Source: Octopus sinensis
Taxonomy: Eukaryota
DNA length: 64,000 nucleotides
Direction of reading: 5' to 3'
Assembly: GCF_006345805.1 (NCBI RefSeq)
Contig: NW_021824833.1
Location: 1-64,000, forward strand
This document shows positions 15,003 through 63,655 of the stretch, piece after piece (position 1 is the first letter of the stretch; each line of letters starts with the position of its first letter). The notes beneath the pieces are model-generated. The model was given only the letters and a program-made list of their open reading frames with translations. It was not told the origin of the DNA and searched no databases. The position numbers and the translations under genes are program-made.

Positions 15003-15034
<32 letters not shown>

Positions 15035-15107
15035 CCATAGATAGACAGACAGACCGGCAGGCAGATTGATCGATAGATGGATAGATAGATAAATAGACAG
15101 ACAAACT

Positions 15108-15154
<47 letters not shown>

Positions 15155-15487
15155 GTATATGTGTGTGTGTAGAGAGAGAGAGCGAGAGACTGTGTGGGTA
15201 TGTGTTTAAGAGAATGGAGAGGAGGGAGGTGGAGAGGGAGGAGTCGGTAGAAACACCATTTTTACAAATATGTCAGCTCAATTGGAAAACTTCATCAAGA
15301 TGGCTTTTTGTGGGGTTTTGTTTTATCTTATTTCATTTGTTTTTGCATATTTTTTTCTAAGGACATAAAAAATAATATTGTTTTCCGCCATTTTAGTTCA
15401 ATGTGGAAATAATCTTTCTCTTCCGCTATATTTCTATTTCTCTATCTCTATCTAATTATACATCTCCCCCCCTCTCTCTCTCTCCAT

Positions 15488-15537
<50 letters not shown>

Positions 15538-15681
15538 ATAATATATATATATATATATATATATATAATACATACTACATATATACATGTATATATATAT
15601 ATTATACATACGAGTGTATGTGTGCTGTATGTGTGTGCATATATATATATATATACATCTATATACGTATGTGTGTACATG

Positions 15682-15712
<31 letters not shown>

Positions 15713-15840
15713 ACGTATATATATATATATAATGAATGTATACCTATGTATATACACACGTATATCTGTGTGTATGTATGTACGTGTATGTATATACATA
15801 CATACATATATATAGATACATATATATGTATATATATCTA

Positions 15841-15912
<72 letters not shown>

Positions 15913-16419
15913 CAGCGAGACAGAGGCAATGTATATCACTGTTGTAGCAACAAAACATCAGATTTAATCTGTTTATGTTATTATTTAAATCAATTTATTT
16001 TATTTATTTCACTCCGACTCCATGATTTTGTTTTTTCTTTTTTTTTCTTTCTGTTTTTATTTAAATATTTTTAAAAACTTTCTTCGCCAAAATTCTTTTG
16101 CTTCTTTTTGACATTCAGATTCCAAGTCCCATTGAGGTGGACTTAGTCATTTAATATTCCTAGGTTGATATAATAAAGTACTGGCGTAAAGTACCAAAAT
16201 TTCAGACCTTGTACCTGAAGCGCAGAAACGTTGGTGCGTCGGACAAACTGCATTGTGGTATTTTTTCCAGCTCTTTGTTTCCTGTGTTCAAATCCAGCCG
16301 AGATCAACTTCGTCTTTCATCGTTTCGGGATGCGTGAAATAACAGAAGCAGTCAAGCACTGGTTTTGATGTACTCGACTAACCTCCACTTCTAAATTGCG
16401 AACACACATTTTTATTATT

Positions 16420-16585
16420 TTTTTCTACTCTAGGCACAAGGACCGAAATTTGTGGGAAGGAGGGCCAGTCGATTAGATCGACGTCAGTACGCAACTGGTA
16501 CTTAATTTATCAACCCTGAAAGGATAAAAAGCAAAGTCGACCTCTGCGGAATTTGAACTCAGAACGTAAAGACAGACAAAATACC
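16420..16585 (-). mobile_element. 3' part of the Meta-domain-type SINE that served as the insertion target (its head is at 22313-22374)
   Basis: The head ggcgagctggcagaaacgttagcacgccgggcgaaatgcttagcggtatttcgtctgtc at 22374-22313 continues the consensus exactly with this segment. Confidence 0.85.
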
Positions 16586-16958
16586 TATTTCTATTTCTTT
16601 ACTACCCACAAGGGGCTAAGCACAGAGAGGACAAACAAGGATAGACAAACGGATTAAGTCGATTATATCGACCCCAGTTTGCAACTGGTACTTAATTTAT
16701 CAACCCCGAAAGGACGAAAAGCAAAGTCGACCTCGGCGGAATTTGAACTCAGAACGTAACGGCAGACGAAATACCTTTTTTTTACTACCCACAAGGGGCT
16801 AAACACAGAGAGGACAAACAAGAACAGACAGACGGATTAAGCCGATTATATCAACCCCAGTGCGTAACTGGTACTTATTTAATCCACCCTGAAAGGATGA
16901 CAGGCAAAGTCGACCTCCGCAGAATTTGATCTCAGAACTTAACGTCAAACGAAATACC
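16586..16958 (-). mobile_element. Two tandem headless SINE-B units (190 and 183 bp) with a Tx1-like 3' tail
   Basis: Each unit starts at GGTATTTCGT, carries the gtcgactttgcctttcatcctttcggggtcgataaa core, and ends tgtgtttagccccttgtgggtagtaaa(gaaat). Confidence 0.85.
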
Positions 16959-17307
16959 AATTTCTTTATTGCCCACCGGGGGCCAAACATAGATATGGAC
17001 AGTACAACTGATGGGATCAGTGAATCGATATGATTTTACATAAATGTGACATCAAAAATAAAATACAATACATAAAAATCGAATGGAATACACAGTACAA
17101 AAACAATACAAATGAAGCGATGATCAAGTTACGCTCCGATCCCACAAGCCCCGATCTACCGCTGATACCTTTTTATTTTTCCTTTTTTTTTTTTTTCCTC
17201 GTCTATTCACACGGTTCCTTGCACGCACAACACTCGTGCAACATACTTCCATCTCTTTTGGAACGTACACTCTGACAGACACCTCTTCTCCAGCCACAGT
17301 TTCCTTT

Positions 17308-20300
17308 TCAAATGAAAAGAAAAAAAGGATCGTAATTGTCACCAGAGATAAAGTTGCCTGTCTTAATTCCTTTTATCCTAGTATTCCATACAGCCTCTTT
17401 TGCTATTGCTACAACCGTGAGAAAACAATTCTTACCTTCGTTCGTTAGAACTCCCGGTGGGTCAATTTTTATAATTGACTCAGTCGACAGCCGTACTCTT
17501 CCTTCGCCGGACAACAGATGTTCAGCATAAGCCCACATTTCAGTTATCTCCGACACTGAACAATAGCGTGAGGGACGGTTTCCCTGTCCCCACCGCATCT
17601 TGGACAGGTCGGCGACTGACGTTTACCATGTCTTGCGAGCTTATCCCAAACGGGCAAGGCACCTCTGTAGCATTGCCAGGTTAAGGACTTTTGGAAGTTG
17701 TCCAACGTTCTCAACCCGAATGTACGATGAAACAAGCTGTCCAGTTGAATAAATCCGAGACCTAGAGTCGACCCCAGGCCATCGTCGCATTCAGACTCTA
17801 CCAACCACTATATAAAATCCGTGTGGAACCCCCACCGCTGGCGTTGCCCGAGCGCCGGAACAGCAAGAGGGCCTTACGGCACTCTTATGCCACTCACTCG
17901 ACCTCGGTCTACGAGAACACCAGGCTTCCTGTTCGCAAAAACTCTTGAACTCAGGGAACATTTGTCTGGCCAGCGGAGACCACACCCGTTCACTATCCAG
18001 GAGAATCCAGAGGTGCCTCAACCTCAACGCATGTCTGCGCATCATTAACCAAGGCATCCCTAAACCTCCATTTAAAGGCTTTTGACAGCAGACAGAGCGT
18101 TTCACAAGTGGCGACCTGCCCTTCCACAAAAAGCGAAAGAGCTGTCTCTCCAACCTGATCAACCACGAATCCGGACAGGGCACGACAGTCAGGCGGTAGG
18201 TAATGACCGATGCGATAAACACATTGGCCACTTCCGCCCTCCCTTTCAGGGATAGCCACCGCCAAGACCAAGTCTTGACTACTGCAGCCACCCTGCTCAA
18301 TACCTCCGTCCAGTTCTTCTCTATCTGGAGGCCTGGTCCAAACCAGACTCCCAGCAACTTAACCGGTCCCTCCGTCCAGCGCCTAACAACACTGTCTGAA
18401 GGCATCGACTTGCCAACCCAGGTGCCGAGCTGCAAGCCGACCGACTTTTCCCGGTTAATCTTTGCTCCTGCTACCTCCTCGTAAGCCTCAATAGTCTTAC
18501 CTACTTCACGTAGGCGTACCACTGTGGTTACACTGATAGTGATATCATCCGCGAAAGCCGTAACAAACTCCTCTAGTCCTGGTTCTCTCGGGATGCCACT
18601 CAACCTTTGCAGTAATGGCTCGAGAGCCATCACATACAAAAGTGGTGAAAGCGGACATCCTTGACGAACCGAGCGTCTGATGCAGAACGGCTTCGAAAGG
18701 AAACCGTTCACCCGAACTATCGAGTCAATGTTGTGGTACAAAGCGATAAACCACCTGAGGAAGCCAAGGCCCAGGCCAAACCGCGCAAGTACAGTCGCTA
18801 GGTATCGATGGTCAACCCTATCAAAAGCTTTAGACTGGTCCAAATGCACCAATGCCCCACCTTTGCCAGATTTATTACCAAACCTCTCTATGGTATAGCG
18901 AATAAGATGGAGGGTATCCTGAATGGTTCTGCCTGGGATGGCACATGTCTGTGCCTCCCCGACTATACCATTCGCGACACGCGCCAACCTTTTTGCTAGA
19001 ACCTTGGCCAAAATCTTCACTTCTGCGTTTAACAGAGTGATGGGCCTGAAATTCTCTAGAACGTCCCCCTTGTCCGGGTCCTTTCTGACCAACGTCACTA
19101 CTCCCCGGCGCACAGATCTGGGGATAAACCCATTCTGTTTCCAGTTCGCGTACACGTCAGTCAGTAGTTGCCCGAACAAGTCTGGCATACATTTATACAG
19201 CTCGTACGGAAGACCATCAAGTCCCGGTGACTTACCCGCTTTACAATCGGCCAAAGCCTCCATCACCTCCTCAAGTGTGATTGGCCCTTCGCAAGACTCC
19301 GCATCCGACCCCGAGAGGCACGGCAGCCCGGTAAGAAAGTCCTCGAGGGCTCTCCCACCACCAGGACCGCCGTCACCCCCGAACAGCTGGGCGAAGTACT
19401 CCCGAAAGACCTCACACATTTTCTCGGGTTCGTTTATCAAGACACCATTTTGATTCGTCAAAGACCGAATAGAGGAACTATTTCCTTGCCGAGCTTCCAC
19501 CACTCGGGCCCATCCAGCGGCTTTGATTCCTTCACTTCCCATTGCACGTAACTTAGCTCTGGTAATACTTCCCATGTGGTGGGCTTCAAGATGCTGGTTT
19601 AACTCCAGTCTTTTCACCCTCGCTTGGTCTGTATTACCAGTCCTCCAGGCTTCTTCTAGTTCCTTAACTAGACCATCTCCTATTTTACGTCCCTTCTTAG
19701 CTAAACTTATGCTAAACCTAATAGACTCATATTTGATGGCTCTTTTTAGGGCGTACCACCATTTGTTATTAATGATGGTACCTGTTAATGCCCTCTGTAT
19801 TAACATCTTGATCCGCTTTCTGTACTCCTCAATCGCCAAAAGGGACGTATTGAGTTTCCAGTAGCCAGATCCCTGTCTATGCAACTTATCTACCGTCAGT
19901 TTACAGGTAACCATCTTGTGGTCACTGTAGCTGACTAGAAAAAACTGTGGACACTCAACTATGGACTTATCTTTTTCTCTAATTAAAATCCTATCTAGAT
20001 ATGTTCTGGTAGACCCGTCACTATTTGACCACGTCCACTGTGGAGTGTTCGGGTGCTCCAACCTATATGGATCTGCTAGCTGAAATTGACTTAGCAGATC
20101 CCGAAAGCCTGTGTTACATTTTCTGTTCATGTTCGAGTTTGAGCCAACACAATCTGTGTGTGCTGCACATATTGTATTAGAGTCTCCTAACACTACTAGT
20201 GAATGCGACGTGGCTAGGAACTTTCCTAGGCCACGAAAATATTCAGTTTGCGGGCCAATAATGTTTGGTGCATAAATAGCGACCAGCCTGATTGTCTTGC

Positions 20301-20607
20301 CACAACTGAATGTCAAGTCGAGAACGACCAGCCTGCCTTCTGGGTCAGAAAAAACCAACTTTTTCTCGGCTACCCGGTTTCTTTTTAGTAGGACCAACAC
20401 CCCACCCCCACCTCCCGCCCGACTCGGAGAAACGTATTTCTCGTAGCCGTTCAGGAGGGGGAGCAGATCTCTTGGCCCCTTCACCCGGGTTTCCGTTGCA
20501 ACAATTACATCCAAATTTCTCGACCTGATGTCATTCAGAAAGCGTCCTTGCTTCCAGCTTGACAACAGGCCATGAACATTTAAACAACCAATGTGAATAG
20601 CCATCAC
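17308..20607 (-). CDS. Tx1 ORF2 (endonuclease + reverse transcriptase), 938-aa open frame with frameshifted C-terminal segments
   Basis: EN motifs CLNVHGL, ATETR, AIYAPN, LGDSN, YLDRIL, YSDH. RT motifs KSPGLDG, FRPITLLN, LDQSKAFD, RQGCPLSP, FADD. The C-terminal CPRC..ETVPHAIVQC sits in a shifted frame (17544-17804). Confidence 0.93.
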
Positions 20608-20975
20608 TTACCTGTTTAATTAGGATTGTCCGGTGGAGGGGGACCCTCCACCTTTTTTTTATCCAGGGTCGGAGGTGGACGGTCTTGGGAAATAGATTTG
20701 TCAAAATCCCGTTCTCACCACCGACACAGAATTATCAGGTGGAGGGGGAATCTCCACCTTTTCCTTTTCTCGCGGGATCGGAGCTGGTAATCCATGAAAT
20801 ATCGACTTGTTAAAATCTAATCTCAATGAAGATACAGTCTTTCTGTACTTATTTTGTAGAATTCTATAAGTCTTATTTGAGACTTCATATATGTCGTAAT
20901 TGATAAATTCCTCTGAAAGGTTATCAATTTTTTTTAGTCTTTATGAGTTGAATGTCTCTCATGAGCTCAGTATCT

Positions 20976-22174
20976 TTAGTGTATACGGCTATTATGCCTT
21001 TTTCTTCTTTTCTCTCTTCTGGCAGTCTTTTTTGGTCGTTGTTCTGTAGTAGTCGCCGCTCTCGGCTGGGTTGCTGGTTGTATTTTTCTTTTGTTTGTTG
21101 TTTTTTTCTCATCTGTTTCTTCTTTATCTTCTTCCTCTTTGTCTTTTTTCTCCTCTTCCTCCTCTTCTTCATTTTCCTTGCAGTTCCTTCGAATGTGGCC
21201 TAATTGACCACATAAAAAACATCGAGGTTTTCGGCCCTCAACAAACACCACGAGGTTCTCCTCCCCTACCTCAATTGTCTCAGGAATTGTTTGAATTATT
21301 TTAGGGTCCGCTTGAATGAGAAGATTAATTGTTTTACCATCCCAGCGTGGGTTTTCCGTAGCGGTAGCCTGGAGGAGAGTAATTTTTTCTACCTCTTGAT
21401 TATTAGGACTGCCGCCAACAACCACATAGGTTCGACCTCTGGCGGGACCCTTGTAATTTTTATTCGCGACGTCCTCATCCCCATATAATAGGGTATTAAC
21501 TCCACGTCGTTCGTTTTCAACGTTTCCACTGAGTTCTTGTGTGCTATTTCTTTATTGGTGAACCTTACTTCCACCGTTCCGAATTTTTTTCCTCTTCTCA
21601 GAAATTCTACGTCGCCCAATATTGGCTTTAAGCACTTTTCTATTTTCTCTTCTGACATTCTTTCAATTTTTCTATTTTGTAGACAATATGTTTTGAAAAT
21701 TATTGTTTTTTGCTTTTCTTCCTGTAATAACTTTTGCGGAGGTTCAATTTTCACACTGTTGTCATTTATTTCCATCATTTTGCTGTATTTCATAATTTCG
21801 CTTTTATTCGTCGACAGTATCTGGGTTCCACCCCCAGCAGCCAACGCAAAACTTTTTTTTCCATTTTTTGGTTCTATCTGGATGCTAGGCACATCAATTA
21901 TTCTCTTCGACACAATGCCTTTGTTCTCTGGCAAAGTCGGAAACTCTTCTGGTGAAAGTTCTGACGAGCTCTCAGACACATCTCCAAAAATATCAAATAT
22001 ATTATCCTCTCTGCTATTCCTTCTTGTAGCGGGGGAAACCCCTATTTCCTTGTCTGTAGTTGGCTCCTCGCCGGACATGTATTTCCTCCTCTCAACAGGA
22101 GAAACAAGTATTTCTGCTCCAACGGTAGGCTCCATGCTAGACGACATTCTTCCCCCCAAAGGGGGAATGAACAA
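20976..22174 (-). CDS. Tx1 ORF1 (RRM-like region + gag-type zinc knuckle), split by a frameshift near 21410
   Basis: Two overlapping frames (21389-22174, 20976-21425); CFLCGQLGHIRRNC CCHC knuckle followed by a charged tail; lies directly upstream of ORF2. Confidence 0.85.
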
Positions 22175-22376
22175 CGCGTGCTACCACAAGCACTAAGTGT
22201 TTTCAATTGAAAACTCCAACAGTTAAGTTATTCAACAGTTTAACAAGAAACAACAGTTGTTAACAATATTAACACCACGAAACAGCAATTCTTACTTCAC
22301 GAACACATGTGCGACAGACGAAATACCGCTAAGCATTTCGCCCGGCGTGCTAACGTTTCTGCCAGCTCGCCGCCTT

Positions 22377-23050
22377 TCTAATATTCTTTTCTACTCGTGG
22401 CACAAAGTCCGAAATTTTGGGGGAGGGGGCCAGTCTATTAGATCGACCCCAGTACGCAACTGAAAGGATAAAAATCAAAGTCGACCTCGGCGGAATTTGA
22501 ACTCAGAACATAAAGACAGGCAAAATACCGCTAAGCATTTTACTCGCCGTGCTAACGATGCCAGCTCGCCGTGTTACACATTTTATTATTAACGTATTCC
22601 AAAGGCGGCGATCTGGCAAAATCGTTAGCACAGCGGGTGAAATGCTTTGCGCTATTTCGTCTGTCTTTACGTTCTGAGTTCAAATTCCGGCGAGGTCGAC
22701 TTTGCCTTTCATCCTTTCAGGGTCGATAAATTAAGTACCAGTAAAAAAAACTGGGGTCAATGTAATCGACTAGTCCCCTCCCCACAAATTTCAGGCCTTG
22801 TGCCTTTAATAGAAAGGATTATTATAACGAGCTGGCAGAGTCGTTAGAGCGCTGGACAGCGCTGGACGAAACAATTAGCGGTATTTCGCCCGTCGCTACG
22901 TTCTGAGTTCAAATTCCGCTGAGGTCAACTTTGCCTTTCATCCTTTCGGGGTCTATAAAATAAGTACTAGTTGCACAGTAGGGTCGATTAATCGACTCAT
23001 CCCCTCCCCTGAAATTGCTGCTCTTGCGGCAAAATTCGAGACTATTATTA
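22377..23050. mobile_element. Cluster of three Meta-domain-type SINE-A copies (22377-22572 minus; 22600-22818 plus; 22829-23050 plus)
   Basis: Repeated head ggcgagctggcag, B-box-like gttcaaattcc, core gtcgactttgcctttcatcctttc and an (att)n tail. The core resembles the Meta/Sauria SINE domain. Confidence 0.85.
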
Positions 23051-32589: not shown

Positions 32590-33330
32590 ATTTCACAGAA
32601 ACTGAAGTTATAGAAGTGATGAAAGCGTTCAAATGTGGCGAAGCCGTAGGAAAGGATAAAATTCGGCCTGAGATGTTAAATGCCTTAAACAGATATAGAG
32701 CAACATTTATATACAGACATAGAAATATTTGCCCAAGTAGAGACATGTGACCATTCGTAAAAGAACTTTGCAGAAACCAGAAATTTCTCTTTAAACCCAA
32801 GACACTGCGAAATCCTACACAGCATGTCGTTCAATACATGGCCATATGCCTTTTCGACATCTACAAAACAAGGGTACACCTCTTCGCAATATTTCTATCG
32901 TTTAAGGCTACGAGCTGGCAGAAACGTTAGCACGCCGGGTCAAATGCTGAGCAGTATTTCGTCTGCCGCTACGTTCTGAATTCAAATTCCGCCGAGGTCG
33001 ACATTGCCTTTCATCCTTTCGACTTCGATAAATTAAGGACCAGTTGCGTACTGAGGTCGATCTAATCGACTGGCCCCCTCCCACCAAATTCTCGGGCCTT
33101 GTGCCAAGAGTAGAAAACAATATTTCTATCGTTTATCGAAGACCTGCCATAGAGTAAATATCTGGTTGGTTGTGCCGTGTCCTGAACGGAAGCCACACAG
33201 CTCTTCAACAAGTTTGAGCGCAACACTTTCCCTCCATCTCTTTCCCAGACCTCTAGCGTAGATTTTACTAGTGATGTTCAATAAGGAGATTCCCTGTAAA
33301 TCAAATATTGTCTCTAGCTTCTCTTTTATA
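32590..33330. mobile_element. RTE-type RT remnant in two opposite orientations
   Basis: Plus: EVIEVMKAFKCGEAVGKDKIRPEML. Minus: QGISLLNITSKIY, GFRSGHGTTNQIFTL, FVDVEKAY. Confidence 0.75.
32905..33117 (+). mobile_element. SINE-A copy with a perfect 18-bp TSD, inserted into an RTE fragment
   Basis: caatatttctatcgttta at 32887-32904 and at 33118-33135. Confidence 0.9.
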
Positions 33331-37153: not shown

Positions 37154-58977
<21,824 letters not shown>

Positions 58978-60815: not shown

Positions 60816-60864
60816 TTATTCTTTTTATATTTTTAATAATAATAATGGTTTCAAATTTTTCCAC

Positions 60865-61009
60865 AAGGGCAACAATTTGGGGAGAGGGGGCTAGGTGATT
60901 ACATTGGCCTCAGTATTTCACTGGTACTTAATTTATCGACTCCTAAAGGAAGAAAGGTAAAGTCGACTTCGGCAAAATTTGAACTCAGAACGTAAAGACA
61001 GACGAAATA
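60865..61009 (-). mobile_element. Headless SINE-A starting at TATTTCGTCTG, directly 3' of the deleted Tx1
   Basis: gacagacgaaata at 60997-61009 abuts the Tx1 3' end. Confidence 0.8.
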
Positions 61010-61014
61010 ATAAT

Positions 61015-62545
61015 AATTGTTTCTTTATTGGCCACAAGGGCCGAACATAGAAGCAAATAGGGACAATACAAAGCAAGGGACAAGTGGGGTTTAACCCCCC
61101 AAAAATCGATTAAACAATAAAATAATGTCAATTAACAATATAATTAAACAATCAAAAATTCTCCAAAAGTGGAGAGTTCCACATAGGGACCACTGAGGAA
61201 CCCCACACACCCTGGTTACCCCGAACGCGAGGTGCACCTCGGCAGGCGCTCCTCTCCTTCTCGACTCCTCCGGTTTACAAGCGAATGTTCAGAGTAGGCC
61301 TATTCACACGTGCCATCCTCGCCACATTCACCCACCTTTCAACAGAAATATTGGGGGTGGGGCAGAACTTCCTTCACTTTCACTTTCCTTTTCAGATGGA
61401 ATTTGGAAAAGTCGACGAGGGCTTCGCCGAAGAGGAAAGCATCTGTCTTCAGACCTTTCAATCTCGCCCACAACACTACCTCCTTCGCCATAACCACCAA
61501 ACAGATGAAAACTGACGTTTTTTTCTCGGCCAAAAGAAGGCGGCGGTGCGATCTTCACGGTGGACTCGGTTGATAACCGGATCCGTCCTACACGCGTCAA
61601 CAAAGCTCCACAAGTCAGTAGTGCCCGGACACTGGACGAGTGCAGGCGGGGCGGTTTAATTGCCCTGCGTACACCTCGGACAGGTCCGTCAGACAGCACT
61701 TCCGTATCTGTAGGACTTGTCTCGAACCGACAGGGCTCCCTGGTAGCACTGCCAGGCCAGCGATTTCTGGAAGTTATCTATAGGCCCCCGGCCCGAAAGT
61801 CCTCCGGAAAAGACCAGCTGATTGATCTTTACCGACGCCCAGAATTACTCCGAGGACGTCATCGTTCTTTCCCGCCACCAATCCCTTATAGAACTCCATA
61901 ATGGAACTTCAGATTGTCACTTTCATTTATTACCACGCAAGCGAGTACCCACTACAGATCTAGTTCTGGTGGCACTTCCTATATGATAATCTTCATCGCC
62001 CTTCTTCCCATATATGTAATGAAGAGCACGAATACCTCGCTACAGCAGGCGGCCAGCGAGTGTTTAATAGCCAGGTCCTCAGTTTTAAAAAACTTTCACC
62101 CCGACTAACTGCTTCACCCTCGATATACGGCCGATGTCCTGCTAAATATCGTGAAGGACCCTTTCTATCTAGGTGTTCGTTGCCATTCCGAGCCGTTTCG
62201 ATTTACGACTAATGCAGTGTTACGTCACTATTTTCCTGGCTGTGTTTTCTAACGTTTCTGGTGGTGGTGATAGTCTGCCCTCTTCCCATCGATTTTTCTA
62301 AATTTTAAAATGGACGTCGCCATCTTGACGGAATTGCTTTTAAACGCCTCTCGAGCGATATTCTGGTGGGCTTAATATTACCCCTTACAGGGCCAAACAA
62401 CCACAGAAAACCTAGTCACAAGTTCTTGGATTTTTCAGTAACAAATTGGAGCGAAAATTCCGAGCGAAAAACAGCACCAAACGGGTGTATAGAATGAATA
62501 TAATGAAGACTTACTTCGAGCGTTCGAAAACACGTCCGACGTACT
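61015..62545 (-). mobile_element. Internally deleted Tx1-family element (5' UTR + start of ORF1 joined to end of ORF2 + 3' UTR)
   Basis: YMGRRAMKIII.EVPPELDL.WVLACVVI matches ORF1 YMGMRTSRIKITRVPPEVEPMWLLAAVLI. DNFQKSLAWQCYQGAL and RIRLSTESTVKIAPP match the ORF2 C-terminus. The junction is near 61900; the 3' end reads GGCCCTTGTGGCCAATAAAGAAA. Confidence 0.85.
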
Positions 62546-62829: not shown

Positions 62830-63235
62830 TAATAATAATAACAATGATTTTTTAGTAGTAGTTCGTTTGATGAAGACATCACCGTCTTAGACAGAATAAT
62901 ATTCATAAAAACTTTTTTTATGTATGTATTCTCATGCATATAGTTGCATATCTAGACATGTTCTTATTGATAAACTTCAGGAAAGTTCTACAGATTTTTA
63001 CAGTTCCATTGATGGACTGGATCTGTAGCCTTCGAATTAGCTTTCTCCTTTCTGATTTTGAGAAGCGTAATTTCTCAAAATTGGTATTTAGGCAGTGTGT
63101 TACATATCCCAGAGCTCCAATAATTACAGGTATAAACCTGAACTTGTAATCTGGATAGAGTAACTGTAGATTTCTCAATAGTTCAGCATAGGTATTCTCT
63201 TTTTCACTGATCTTCAGCTTTATGTTATCATCCGT
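62825..63235 (-). mobile_element. 3' fragment of a second RLE-type non-LTR family
   Basis: DDNIKLKISEKENTYAELLRNLQLLYPDYKFRFIPVIIGALG...LQIQSINGTVKICRTF. Confidence 0.75.
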
Positions 63236-63306
63236 ATGTATGTATGTATGTATGTATGTATGTATGTATGTATGTATGTACGTATGTATGTATGTATGTA
63301 TGTATG

Positions 63307-63655
63307 ACCCTGCCTCAGTAAAGCTGGACTCAAGAGTTATCTTCGTAGTCATAAAGCGAGACAGATGAGTGATAACCTGGCCACTGGTGGTGGTGTTACA
63401 CACCATACTAATCATATCTGTTGGGCATGTGGAAGAAAGTGTAATTCGGCGGGAGGACTTAAACGACATGCAAAGGTACATGAAGCCCAGTTACAACTAC
63501 AGTCGGCTACTGCCGGTAAAGGTTTTAGCTGCCAATTCTGTACAAGACATTGTAGATCTTTAGCTGGGCAAAAAAGTCACGTTCGATCACAGCACCAATA
63601 ACAGTTAAGCTTCGTGCAATGGCCATACTCGATAACGAGGGGGCAACCATCATGT
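63307..63655 (+). mobile_element. RTE-type 3' end with tandem C2H2 zinc fingers and a (TATG)n tail
   Basis: CWACGRKCNSAGGLKRHAKVH and CQFCTRHCRSLAGQKSHVRSQH, plus a partial third finger upstream; short 3' UTR, then catc(atgt)n. Confidence 0.7.

What the first reader, a model, noticed from the sequence alone, without database searches (positions are those of the whole stretch)
16586..16958. Self-targeting SINE builds precise headless tandem arrays using a borrowed Tx1 tail
Seen: the two units begin exactly at GGTATTTCGT and end in tgtgtttagccccttgtgggtagtaaagaaat. This resembles the LINE ends ctatgtttggcccccggtgggcaataaagaaatt (16959) and ctatgttcggcccttgtggccaataaagaaa (61020), and differs from the SINE-A tail. 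Established: SINEs recruit LINE machinery through shared 3' ends. Inference: SINE-B contains the very site its partner endonuclease cuts, so on insertion into another SINE the cDNA can anneal to the 15-nt target overhang and drop its head. This would give exact-register arrays, a LINE-SINE-target feedback loop.
Basis: partly seen in the sequence, partly recalled or inferred. Interest (0 to 1): 0.8.

Follow-up and report, generated by a model that had tools for sequence, protein, structure and literature searches.

The report
SINE-targeting LINE builds nested SINE array
A Tx1-like LINE and the short element (SINE) that borrows its tail repeatedly landed at one exact spot (just before GGTATTT) inside another SINE, leaving one SINE "head" followed by three head-less bodies; this is retrotransposition, not duplication, building a small tandem array.

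Summary
On the minus strand one founder SINE carries a single 47-nt head (22374-22328). A 5.35-kb Tx1/L1-type LINE follows (22312-16959), then three bodies that all start at GGTATTT: u1, u2 (LINE-like "B" tails) and u3 ("A" tail).

- **LINE insertion.** The LINE is flanked by a 15-16-nt target-site duplication, GGTATTTCGTCTGTC(G) / GGTATTTCGTTTGAC(G), so it cut exactly at that site.
- **Independent SINE-B.** A full-length SINE-B at 39874-39654 sits in non-SINE DNA with a duplication starting GGTATTT.
- **Junction count.** Four of five B/LINE1-type 3' ends in the window abut GGTATTT, against 1.4e-4 expected per position.
- **5' starts.** No other SINE copy in the window starts there.
- **Shared tail.** The SINE-B tail shares about 45-50 nt with the LINE 3' end.

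Site-preferring insertion into the SINE family's own conserved 5' region is well supported. Head loss by annealing of the cDNA to the 15-nt overhang fits every junction but is inferred. Simple duplication is disfavoured: u1 and u2 are 84.7% identical and have different tails. Only one array could be examined, because no further sequence from this genome was reachable. I rate it a new variant of target-specific Tx1/SINE systems such as Tx1-Mar/SINEU.

The parts
22576..22590 (-). Outer target-site duplication, left copy (AATAATAAAATGTGT), flanking the whole SINE cluster
   Evidence: Matches 16404-16419 at 15/16 positions
22386..22571 (-). S1: full-length SINE-A immediately upstream of the founder, with an internal deletion
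   Evidence: BLAST to a full-length SINE-A. 92.8% identical to u3 in the body and shares three private variants with it
22375..22385 (-). 11-nt spacer AATATTAGAAA between the S1 tail and the founder head; probably a degraded copy of the first 11 nt of the outer duplication
   Evidence: 9/11 match to AATAATAAAAA at 16419-16409. Low-complexity sequence, so this is weak evidence
22328..22374 (-). HEAD2: the single tRNA-related SINE head of the array (47 nt)
   Evidence: Identical or near-identical to the heads of full-length copies. Joined to u1 or u3 it gives a colinear full SINE, 89% and 91% identity
22312..22327 (-). Left copy of the LINE's target-site duplication, GGTATTTCGTCTGTC(G)
   Evidence: 13/15 (14/16) match to 16958-16943, and 14/15 to the first 15 nt of u3
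16959..22312 (-). Tx1/L1-type LINE, probably full length. ORF1 is 22174-21389 plus a CCHC part at 21425-20976. ORF2 is 20607-17791 (938 codons). The zf-RVT region lies in a shifted frame at 17804-17544. The 3' end is ...ggcccccggtgggcaataaagaaatt
   Evidence: Pfam Exo_endo_phos, RVT_1, zf-RVT and zf-CCHC. Colinear with human L1 ORF2p, E = 1e-64. Best named homologue is 'Transposon TX1 149 kDa protein' at 31% identity; the closest hit is 59%
16776..16958 (-). u1: SINE-B body and tail starting at GGTATTT; tail is gtagtaaa followed by an A run. Its first 15-16 nt are the right copy of the LINE's duplication
16586..16775 (-). u2: SINE-B body and tail starting at GGTATTT; tail is gtagtaaagaaatagaaata
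16420..16585 (-). u3: body and A-type tail of the founder SINE-A, starting at GGTATTT
16404..16419 (-). Outer target-site duplication, right copy (AATAATAAAAATGTGT)
39643..39885 (-). Independent full-length SINE-B (about 39874-39654) in non-SINE DNA, flanked by the duplication GGTATTTACTG / GGTATTTGCTG
40693..40892 (+). Independent 5'-truncated SINE-B (starts at about position 66 of the full element) with an 18-nt duplication TATACATAATRCTAAAAC. This is the one B-type 3' end not followed by GGTATTT
61019..61908 (-). 3' part of a second, diverged Tx1-like LINE with the same kind of tail (...gtggccaataaagaaac). It is followed by (ATT)n and a SINE body that starts at TATTTCGTCTG

Best explanation
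The window comes from a genome packed with tRNA-derived SINEs that share a head and body but carry different 3' tails. It looks like an octopod genome, but that is my memory of the SINE sequence and was not verified.

One tail type ('B') is copied from the 3' end of a Tx1/L1-type LINE, so SINE-B is moved by that LINE's machinery. The LINE's endonuclease prefers to nick the bottom strand immediately 5' of GGTATTT and the top strand about 11-18 nt downstream (15-16 nt for the LINE itself). That motif lies in the conserved 5' region of the SINE family, at the loop/3'-arm boundary of a 13-bp hairpin formed with the head. The abundant SINEs therefore act as landing pads.

At this locus a founder SINE-A (head 22374-22328 plus u3) was hit at that site at least three times: by two SINE-B RNAs (u2, u1) and, later, by the LINE.

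Inferred step: when the incoming RNA is itself a SINE, its cDNA carries the complement of the same 15 nt once reverse transcription has passed the site. That cDNA end anneals to the 15-nt top-strand overhang left by second-strand cleavage. Second-strand synthesis then starts there and the incoming head is never integrated. Each such hit adds one 'body + tail' unit in exact register and regenerates the target. The LINE has no such internal homology, so it integrated at full length with a visible 15-16-nt duplication.
For: Shown:
1. The LINE (22312-16959) lies between SINE head + GGTATTTCGTCTGTC(G) and GGTATTTCGTTTGAC(G) + SINE body. This is a 15-16-nt duplication at the site. The joined flanks are colinear with full-length SINEs.
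2. There is one head for three bodies inside the founder. The cluster is flanked by a 15/16-nt outer duplication.
3. Three different tails abut GGTATTT: the LINE tail, an A-run variant, and AAAGAAATAGAAATA. A fourth unit carries an A-type tail. These are separate retrotransposition products.
4. A full-length SINE-B in unrelated DNA has the duplication GGTATTTRCTG.
5. 4 of 5 B/LINE1-type 3' ends abut GGTATTT, against 1.4e-4 per position expected.
6. Of about 21 SINE copies, 5' starts at position 48-52 occur only behind B/LINE-type tails. Other truncations fall at positions 12, 13-15, 25, 37-39, 66, 72 and 97.
7. The SINE-B tail aligns with both LINE 3' ends over about 45-50 nt.
8. u1 and u2 are 84.7% identical and share only one private variant.

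From the literature:
- Tx1-clade LINEs are commonly target-specific and mobilise SINEs to the same target. This gives tandem SINE insertions sandwiching a duplication (PMC4494074).
- An annealing pathway of LINE 5'-end joining uses the 3' overhang; L1 gives 15-bp duplications (PMC4245944).
Against: - Only one array and five informative junctions; no more of this genome could be reached.
- The annealing step leaves no trace that separates it from exact truncation at the end of the overlap.
- Position 14 of the 15-mer is B-type (C) in u2 rather than founder-type (T). The overhang copy must therefore have been trimmed or repaired.
- The LINE's two duplication copies differ at 2 of 15 positions, although the LINE looks young (938-codon ORF2 without a stop).
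- About 12 other intact SINE sites in the window are unoccupied, while one locus was hit three times.
- S1 and u3 share private variants, so recombination has probably also acted nearby.
- The preference is not absolute: one SINE-B has the duplication TATACAT....
Confidence: 0.65

Rival explanations
1. Unequal crossover, replication slippage or tandem duplication. A single 'tail|GGTATTT' junction arose once and the head-less unit was then copied by recombination, as proposed for SINE arrays in bivalves.
For: Bivalve arrays of the form TSD1-(SINE)n-TSD1, with head-truncated inner units, are ascribed to unequal recombination (PMC11481361). S1 and u3 are the most similar A-type pair (92.8%) and share three private variants. 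u1 and u2 share one private variant, and u2 and u3 share two. A single outer duplication flanks the cluster.
Against: The three junctions carry three different upstream tails (LINE tail, A-run, AAAGAAATAGAAATA), and u3 has a different tail family. u1 and u2 are only 84.7% identical. Inner units have complete tails, unlike the bivalve arrays. The rival does not explain why the LINE and an unrelated SINE-B insertion use the same GGTATTT site.
Confidence: 0.12
2. One integration event with serial template jumping. Reverse transcription started on one SINE RNA at the founder's site and jumped end-to-end onto the 3' ends of further RNAs. This would require SINE RNAs whose 5' ends lie at GGUAUUU, for example from cleavage in the hairpin loop.
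For: The site sits at the loop/3'-arm boundary of a predicted 13-bp hairpin. The head-side 15-mer matches u3's 15-mer at 14/15, better than it matches u1's at 13/15. End-to-end template jumping by non-LTR reverse transcriptases is established; I cite it from memory (R2, Bibillo and Eickbush 2002).
Against: The apparent ages differ. u1 is about 12% from the family consensus, whereas the LINE keeps a 938-codon open ORF2. No stand-alone head-less copy starting at GGTATTT is seen in unique DNA in the window. The independent SINE-B and the LINE's own duplication already show that the site is a target rather than an RNA end.
Confidence: 0.12
3. A multimeric master copy. A SINE-B source gene already containing two bodies retrotransposed as a unit.
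For: It cannot be excluded from one locus. Dimeric SINEs are known in other taxa (from memory).
Against: Both other SINE-B copies in the window are monomers. u1 and u2 differ by 15% and have different tails. The third body has an A-type tail.
Confidence: 0.05

Closest known systems
Tx1-Mar LINEs and SINEU SINEs of crocodilians (Kojima 2015, PMC4494074)
   Same: A Tx1-group LINE with sequence-preferring insertion into an abundant repeat. A SINE partner goes to the same target. Repeated hits give tandem SINE insertions that sandwich the target-site duplication.
   Different: There the target is an unrelated DNA transposon (Mariner-N4_AMi) and the tandem units are complete. Here the target lies inside the SINE family itself, the duplication is the first 15 nt of each unit, and the added units lack heads.
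Annealing (microhomology) pathway of LINE 5'-end joining (Yamaguchi, Kajikawa and Okada 2014, PMC4245944). Also the homology-assisted 5' junctions of R2 with co-transcribed 28S sequence (Eickbush 2000 and Fujimoto 2004, as cited in PMC4494074)
   Same: The 3' overhang left by second-strand cleavage pairs with the cDNA end, and this fixes the 5' junction.
   Different: Usual microhomologies are 1-5 nt and fall at random truncation points. Here the overlap would be the full 15 nt, always at the same internal position, because the RNA carries a copy of the target.
SINE tandem arrays in bivalves, TSD1-(SINE)n-TSD1 (Mob DNA 2024, PMC11481361), and SINE-derived tandem repeats in squamates cited there
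   Same: A first unit with a head, head-less following units, and one duplication around the whole array.
   Different: Inner units there are truncated at both ends with identical junctions and are ascribed to unequal recombination. Here the tails are complete, are of three kinds, and the units are 10-15% apart.
CORE-SINE-type modular SINEs with exchangeable LINE-derived tails (octopus OR2 is listed as a CORE-SINE in PMC4758252)
   Same: One head and body combined with different LINE-related tails (A, B and C types in this window).
   Different: The assignment of this SINE to OR2/CORE rests on my memory of the sequences and was not tested with a model. Rfam gave no hit.
Alu insertion into the A-tails of older Alus (L1 endonuclease TTTT/AA preference; from memory)
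   Same: The partner endonuclease's preference makes an older SINE the landing site and produces head-to-tail SINEs. The window's A/C-type SINE arrays in (ATT)n tails (46176-46969) look like this.
   Different: Those insertions fall in the tail and keep random 5' ends. The B-type hits fall inside the body at a single position.

Membership tests
tRNA-derived SINE with a LINE-derived 3' tail (stringent LINE/SINE partnership) | The 3' end is shared with a LINE in the same genome | tested here: met
   The SINE-B tail aligns with the LINE1 and LINE2 3' ends over about 45-50 nt, ending in (A/G)TAAAGAAA
tRNA-derived SINE with a LINE-derived 3' tail (stringent LINE/SINE partnership) | Dispersed copies with variable target-site duplications and 5' truncations | tested here: met
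   Duplications of 11, 17 and 18 nt for copies at 39874-39654, 32905-33118 and 40711-40874. 5' starts are variable
tRNA-derived SINE with a LINE-derived 3' tail (stringent LINE/SINE partnership) | tRNA-related head with pol III A and B boxes | tested here: inconclusive
   A B-box-like GAGTTCAAATTCC and an A-box-like GCTGGCAGAA are visible. ARAGORN and Rfam give no call
Tx1 group of L1-superfamily LINEs | ORF2 with an N-terminal APE-type endonuclease, RT and a C-terminal zinc-binding domain; ORF1 with a CCHC knuckle | tested here: met
   Pfam Exo_endo_phos, RVT_1, zf-RVT and zf-CCHC. Colinear with L1 ORF2p residues 10-889, E = 1e-64
Tx1 group of L1-superfamily LINEs | RT phylogeny places the element inside the Tx1 clade rather than in other L1 lineages | tested here: inconclusive
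   The only support is the name of the best labelled homologue ('Transposon TX1 149 kDa protein', 31% identity). L1-Tx1 families are reported as active in Octopus vulgaris (PMC13282606). No tree was built
Tx1 group of L1-superfamily LINEs | Insertion at a specific sequence in a repeated target | tested here: met
   The LINE has a 15-16-nt duplication at the SINE site. 4 of 5 LINE1/SINE-B 3' ends abut GGTATTT. The sample is small and the preference is not absolute
Sequential tandem insertion at a regenerated target (SINEU-3 / Tx1-Mar type) | Successive units are separated by a copy of the target-site duplication | tested here: met
   Each unit begins with the 15-mer GGTATTTYGTYTGNC, which is the LINE's duplication
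Recombination-made SINE satellite (bivalve TSD1-(SINE)n-TSD1 type) | Inner units share the same truncated-tail to truncated-head junction and are highly similar | tested here: not met
   Tails are complete and of three kinds. u1-u2 identity is 84.7% and u2-u3 is 89.8%. u1 and u2 share one private variant
Annealing-mediated 5'-end joining | The 5' end of the insert overlaps the target's 3' overhang | tested here: inconclusive
   Every SINE-into-SINE junction is compatible with a 15-nt overlap. The overlap cannot be told apart from exact truncation, and position 14 in u2 is of the incoming type

The most novel reading that the evidence does not exclude
An abundant SINE family carries, in its own conserved 5' hairpin, the preferred cleavage site of a Tx1-type LINE, and one of its subfamilies has adopted that LINE's tail. 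Every SINE is then both passenger and landing pad. Homology between the incoming cDNA and the 15-nt overhang converts dispersed SINEs, hit by hit, into register-perfect head-less arrays. This would be a retrotransposition-driven, recombination-independent route from SINE to satellite-like repeat. It may also give the LINE a safe harbour and possibly co-transcription from the SINE head.
Probability: 0.35. Interest if true: 0.7.

Novelty: new variant of a known kind. Interest (0 to 1): 0.55.

Why it matters
Tandem arrays derived from SINEs are usually put down to unequal recombination. This locus suggests a second route in which targeted reverse transcription adds units one at a time. The target sits inside the element, and long homology between cDNA and overhang sets an exact register.

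If it is general in this genome, three things follow:
- It would help explain SINE clustering in genomes where SINEs make up about 4-12% of the DNA (figures for octopus species in PMC12988792 and PMC13282606).
- It would add a SINE to the list of Tx1 targets.
- It would be a natural case in which the 5'-joining step of LINE integration is dictated by a defined 15-nt homology, which is useful for studying that poorly understood step.

It also warns annotators that head-less SINE 'satellites' may be nested insertions.

Tried and rejected
- **Searching for more of this genome.**
  - Exact-pattern scans for the SINE-B tail in metagenome contigs and genome contigs gave 29 and 17 chance hits. None contained the SINE.
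  - A 30-nt SINE core pattern in viral contigs gave nothing.
  - An exact look-up of the window's ORF2 gave nothing.
  - The closest ORF2 relative, at 59% identity, lies on a 3-kb contig without the tail.
- **Relatives at 40% identity.** Loci L048 and L049 have unrelated 3' UTRs and say nothing about the target.
- **RNA and tRNA models.** Rfam and ARAGORN found no hits in the window.
- **Hairpin in the shared tail.** A 4-bp GCCC-N5-GGGY hairpin is predicted but shows no compensatory change, so it was not used as evidence.
- **Literature.** Searching papers for the SINE sequence strings returned nothing. No paper was found that describes a SINE-targeting Tx1 element or this array type in cephalopods.
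- **LINE2 / SINE junction at 61020.** I first counted it as a fifth hit at the site. I set it aside because (ATT)n lies between the two elements, and insertion into the microsatellite explains it equally well.
- **S1 head plus u3 tail as one founder.** I considered a founder with everything else nested inside it. I preferred 'duplication-S1-duplication'-founder-duplication' because of the 11-nt spacer. The two readings do not change the main conclusion.

Full report
**1. What is there**

The window is AT-rich, full of microsatellites and carries about 21 copies of one tRNA-derived SINE family. It resembles octopod sequence, but that is my recollection of octopus SINEs and was not verified by any tool. 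Full-length copies have three parts:
- a 47-nt head (ggcggcgagctggcagaaacgttagcacgccgggcgaaatgcttagc);
- a shared body beginning GGTATTTCGTCTG;
- one of several tails.

An example is 32905-33118, with a 17-nt target-site duplication. I call the tails A (…cccacaaatttcgggccttgtgcctagagtagaaa…), C (…ttgctggccttgtgcaaaaatttgaaa…) and B (…ccgtttgtctgtccttgtttgtcctctctgtgtttagccccttgtgggtagtaaagaaata).

**2. The observation**

TRF reports a 183-bp period, 2.9 copies, at 16470-17001. On the minus strand, u1 (16958-16776) and u2 (16775-16586) start at GGTATTTCGT and carry B tails. The tails end differently, A-run in u1 and AAAGAAATAGAAATA in u2. A third unit, u3 (16585-16420), starts at the same place but has an A tail. 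The third unit was missed.

**3. The flanking LINE**

- **Structure.** Directly 5' of u1 lies the end of a 5.35-kb LINE (22312-16959, minus strand).
  - ORF1 includes a CCHC knuckle.
  - ORF2 is 938 codons with APE endonuclease and RT domains.
  - The zf-RVT region lies in a shifted frame, implying two frameshifts.
- **Relatives.** ORF2 is colinear with human L1 ORF2p at E = 1e-64. Its best labelled relative is a 'Transposon TX1' protein at 31% identity, and its closest relative is 59% identical. 'Tx1-like' is therefore reasonable but not proven by phylogeny. L1-Tx1 families are listed as recently active in Octopus vulgaris (PMC13282606).
- **Shared tail.** The last 45-50 nt of this LINE, of a second diverged LINE ending near 61020, and of the SINE-B tail all align. 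This confirms the 'borrowed tail'.

**4. The key finding**

Upstream of the LINE's 5' end lies a SINE head followed by GGTATTTCGTCTGTC(G). Downstream of its 3' end u1 begins GGTATTTCGTTTGAC(G). The LINE therefore inserted into a SINE exactly before GGTATTT, with a 15-16-nt duplication. Joining the flanks gives a colinear full-length SINE.

The array is therefore one head, then the LINE, then three bodies. The cluster is bounded by a 15/16-nt outer duplication (AATAATAAAATGTGT at 22590-22576; AATAATAAAAATGTGT at 16419-16404).

A further full-length SINE-A, S1 (22571-22386), lies between the left outer duplication and the head. An 11-nt spacer that resembles the start of that duplication follows S1. 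I read the locus as: duplication, S1, duplication', [head | LINE | u1 | u2 | u3], duplication.

**5. Is GGTATTT a target?**

- An independent full-length SINE-B (39874-39654) in non-SINE DNA has the duplication GGTATTTACTG / GGTATTTGCTG.
- Of five B/LINE1-type 3' ends in the window, four abut GGTATTT. The fifth (40874) has the duplication TATACATAATRCTAAAAC.
- GGTATTT occurs 18 times on both strands, 1.4e-4 per oriented position, so chance is excluded.
- 5' starts at position 48-52 are seen only behind B/LINE-type tails (u1, u2, u3 and, ambiguously, the copy at 61011).
- All other truncated copies start at positions 12, 13-15, 25, 37-39, 66, 72 or 97. The head-to-tail arrays of A/C-type SINEs in (ATT)n tails at 46176-46969 have variable starts.

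**6. Mechanism**

*Shown:*
- site-preferring cleavage;
- a 15-16-nt stagger for the LINE;
- a tail shared by LINE and SINE-B;
- separate retrotransposition products at each junction, with three different tails.

*Inferred:*
- Once the cDNA of an incoming SINE has been copied through its own site, it pairs with the 15-nt top-strand overhang.
- That overhang primes the second strand, so the incoming head is never integrated.

This extends the annealing pathway of 5'-end joining (PMC4245944). It also parallels the homology-assisted 5' junctions known for R2 (cited in PMC4494074). Each hit regenerates the site, so arrays can grow.

The RNA fold places the site at the loop/3'-arm boundary of a 13-bp hairpin with the head. 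The DNA there is an imperfect palindrome, which may matter for recognition, but this is speculation.

**7. Rivals**

- **Duplication or unequal crossover.** This is disfavoured by the different tails and by 84.7% identity between u1 and u2 with one shared private variant. However, S1 and u3 (92.8%, three shared private variants) may be recombination products or members of the same sub-subfamily. Such arrays are attributed to recombination in bivalves (PMC11481361).
- **One-shot template jumping.** This would need SINE RNAs ending at GGUAUUU, and it conflicts with the different apparent ages of u1 and the LINE.
- **A dimeric master copy.** Nothing supports it in the window.

**8. Weak points**

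- Only one array was available.
- The LINE's duplication copies differ at 2 of 15 positions although the LINE looks young.
- u2's 15-mer is of the incoming type at position 14.
- About 12 other SINE sites in the window are empty.
- No additional sequence from this genome could be obtained.

**9. Comparison and novelty**

The nearest described system is Tx1-Mar/SINEU. There a target-specific Tx1 LINE and its SINEs go to one site in a Mariner element and form tandem insertions sandwiching the duplication (PMC4494074).

Here the target lies within the SINE family itself and the added units lose their heads. I found no description of this in the searchable literature. Repbase notes and subscription papers were not searchable.

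I rate it a new variant of a known kind, of moderate interest, and cheap to confirm or refute by a genome-wide census.

Noticed in passing
window 46176-46969 (+) and 22602-23040 (+): Other head-to-tail SINE arrays (four and two units) made of A/C-type SINEs. Their 5' starts vary (positions about 13, 72, 25 and 4), and each sits in the (ATT)n-like tail of the previous one. They look like insertion into microsatellite tails by a different LINE partner.
   Followed up: partly
window 22571-22386 (-) versus 16585-16420 (-): S1 and u3 are the most similar A-type pair (92.8%). They share three private variants, including the CpG-to-TpG change inside the 15-mer. S1 is followed by an 11-nt near-copy of the outer duplication. 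This suggests a duplication-mediated SINE duplication, or two hits from one source.
   Followed up: partly
window 61019-61908 (-) and 60841-61011 (-): A second, diverged Tx1-like LINE 3' fragment with the same kind of tail is followed by caATTATTATTA and then a SINE body starting TATTTCGTCTG. It is ambiguous between a hit near the same site and insertion into an (ATT)n tail. The 5' boundary of this LINE was not resolved.
   Followed up: partly
window 39874-39654 (-), RNA fold; the same motif occurs in all SINE heads: The target GGYATTTCGTCTG is the 3' arm of a predicted 13-bp hairpin with the head's CTGGGCGAAATGC (loop TTAG). The LINE/SINE-B tail end GAAATA resembles the 5' arm (CGAAATGC), so each new tail|site junction re-creates a small palindrome.
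   Followed up: no
window 17540-17810 (-): The LINE's ORF2 leaves its frame near 17800 and returns near 17570. The zf-RVT match is in the shifted frame. This means two compensating frameshifts, or sequencing errors, in an otherwise stop-free 938-codon ORF.
   Followed up: no
window 16160-16400 (+): A strongly diverged SINE of the same superfamily (about 67% identity to the others, with a different tail) lies tail-to-tail against u3. Only the 16-nt outer duplication separates them.
   Followed up: no
window 62918-63481 (-) and 63365-63601 (+): An ORF whose C-terminal half looks like a conserved retroelement-associated domain (…IPVIIGALGYV…), next to a short C2H2-like ORF on the other strand. 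Neither was searched.
   Followed up: no
window 15003-15925 and many other places: Long microsatellites: (AGAT)38, about 390 bp of (AT)n, (AG)n, and (ATT)n runs next to SINE tails. The (ATT)n tracts seem to grow out of A/C-type SINE tails.
   Followed up: no
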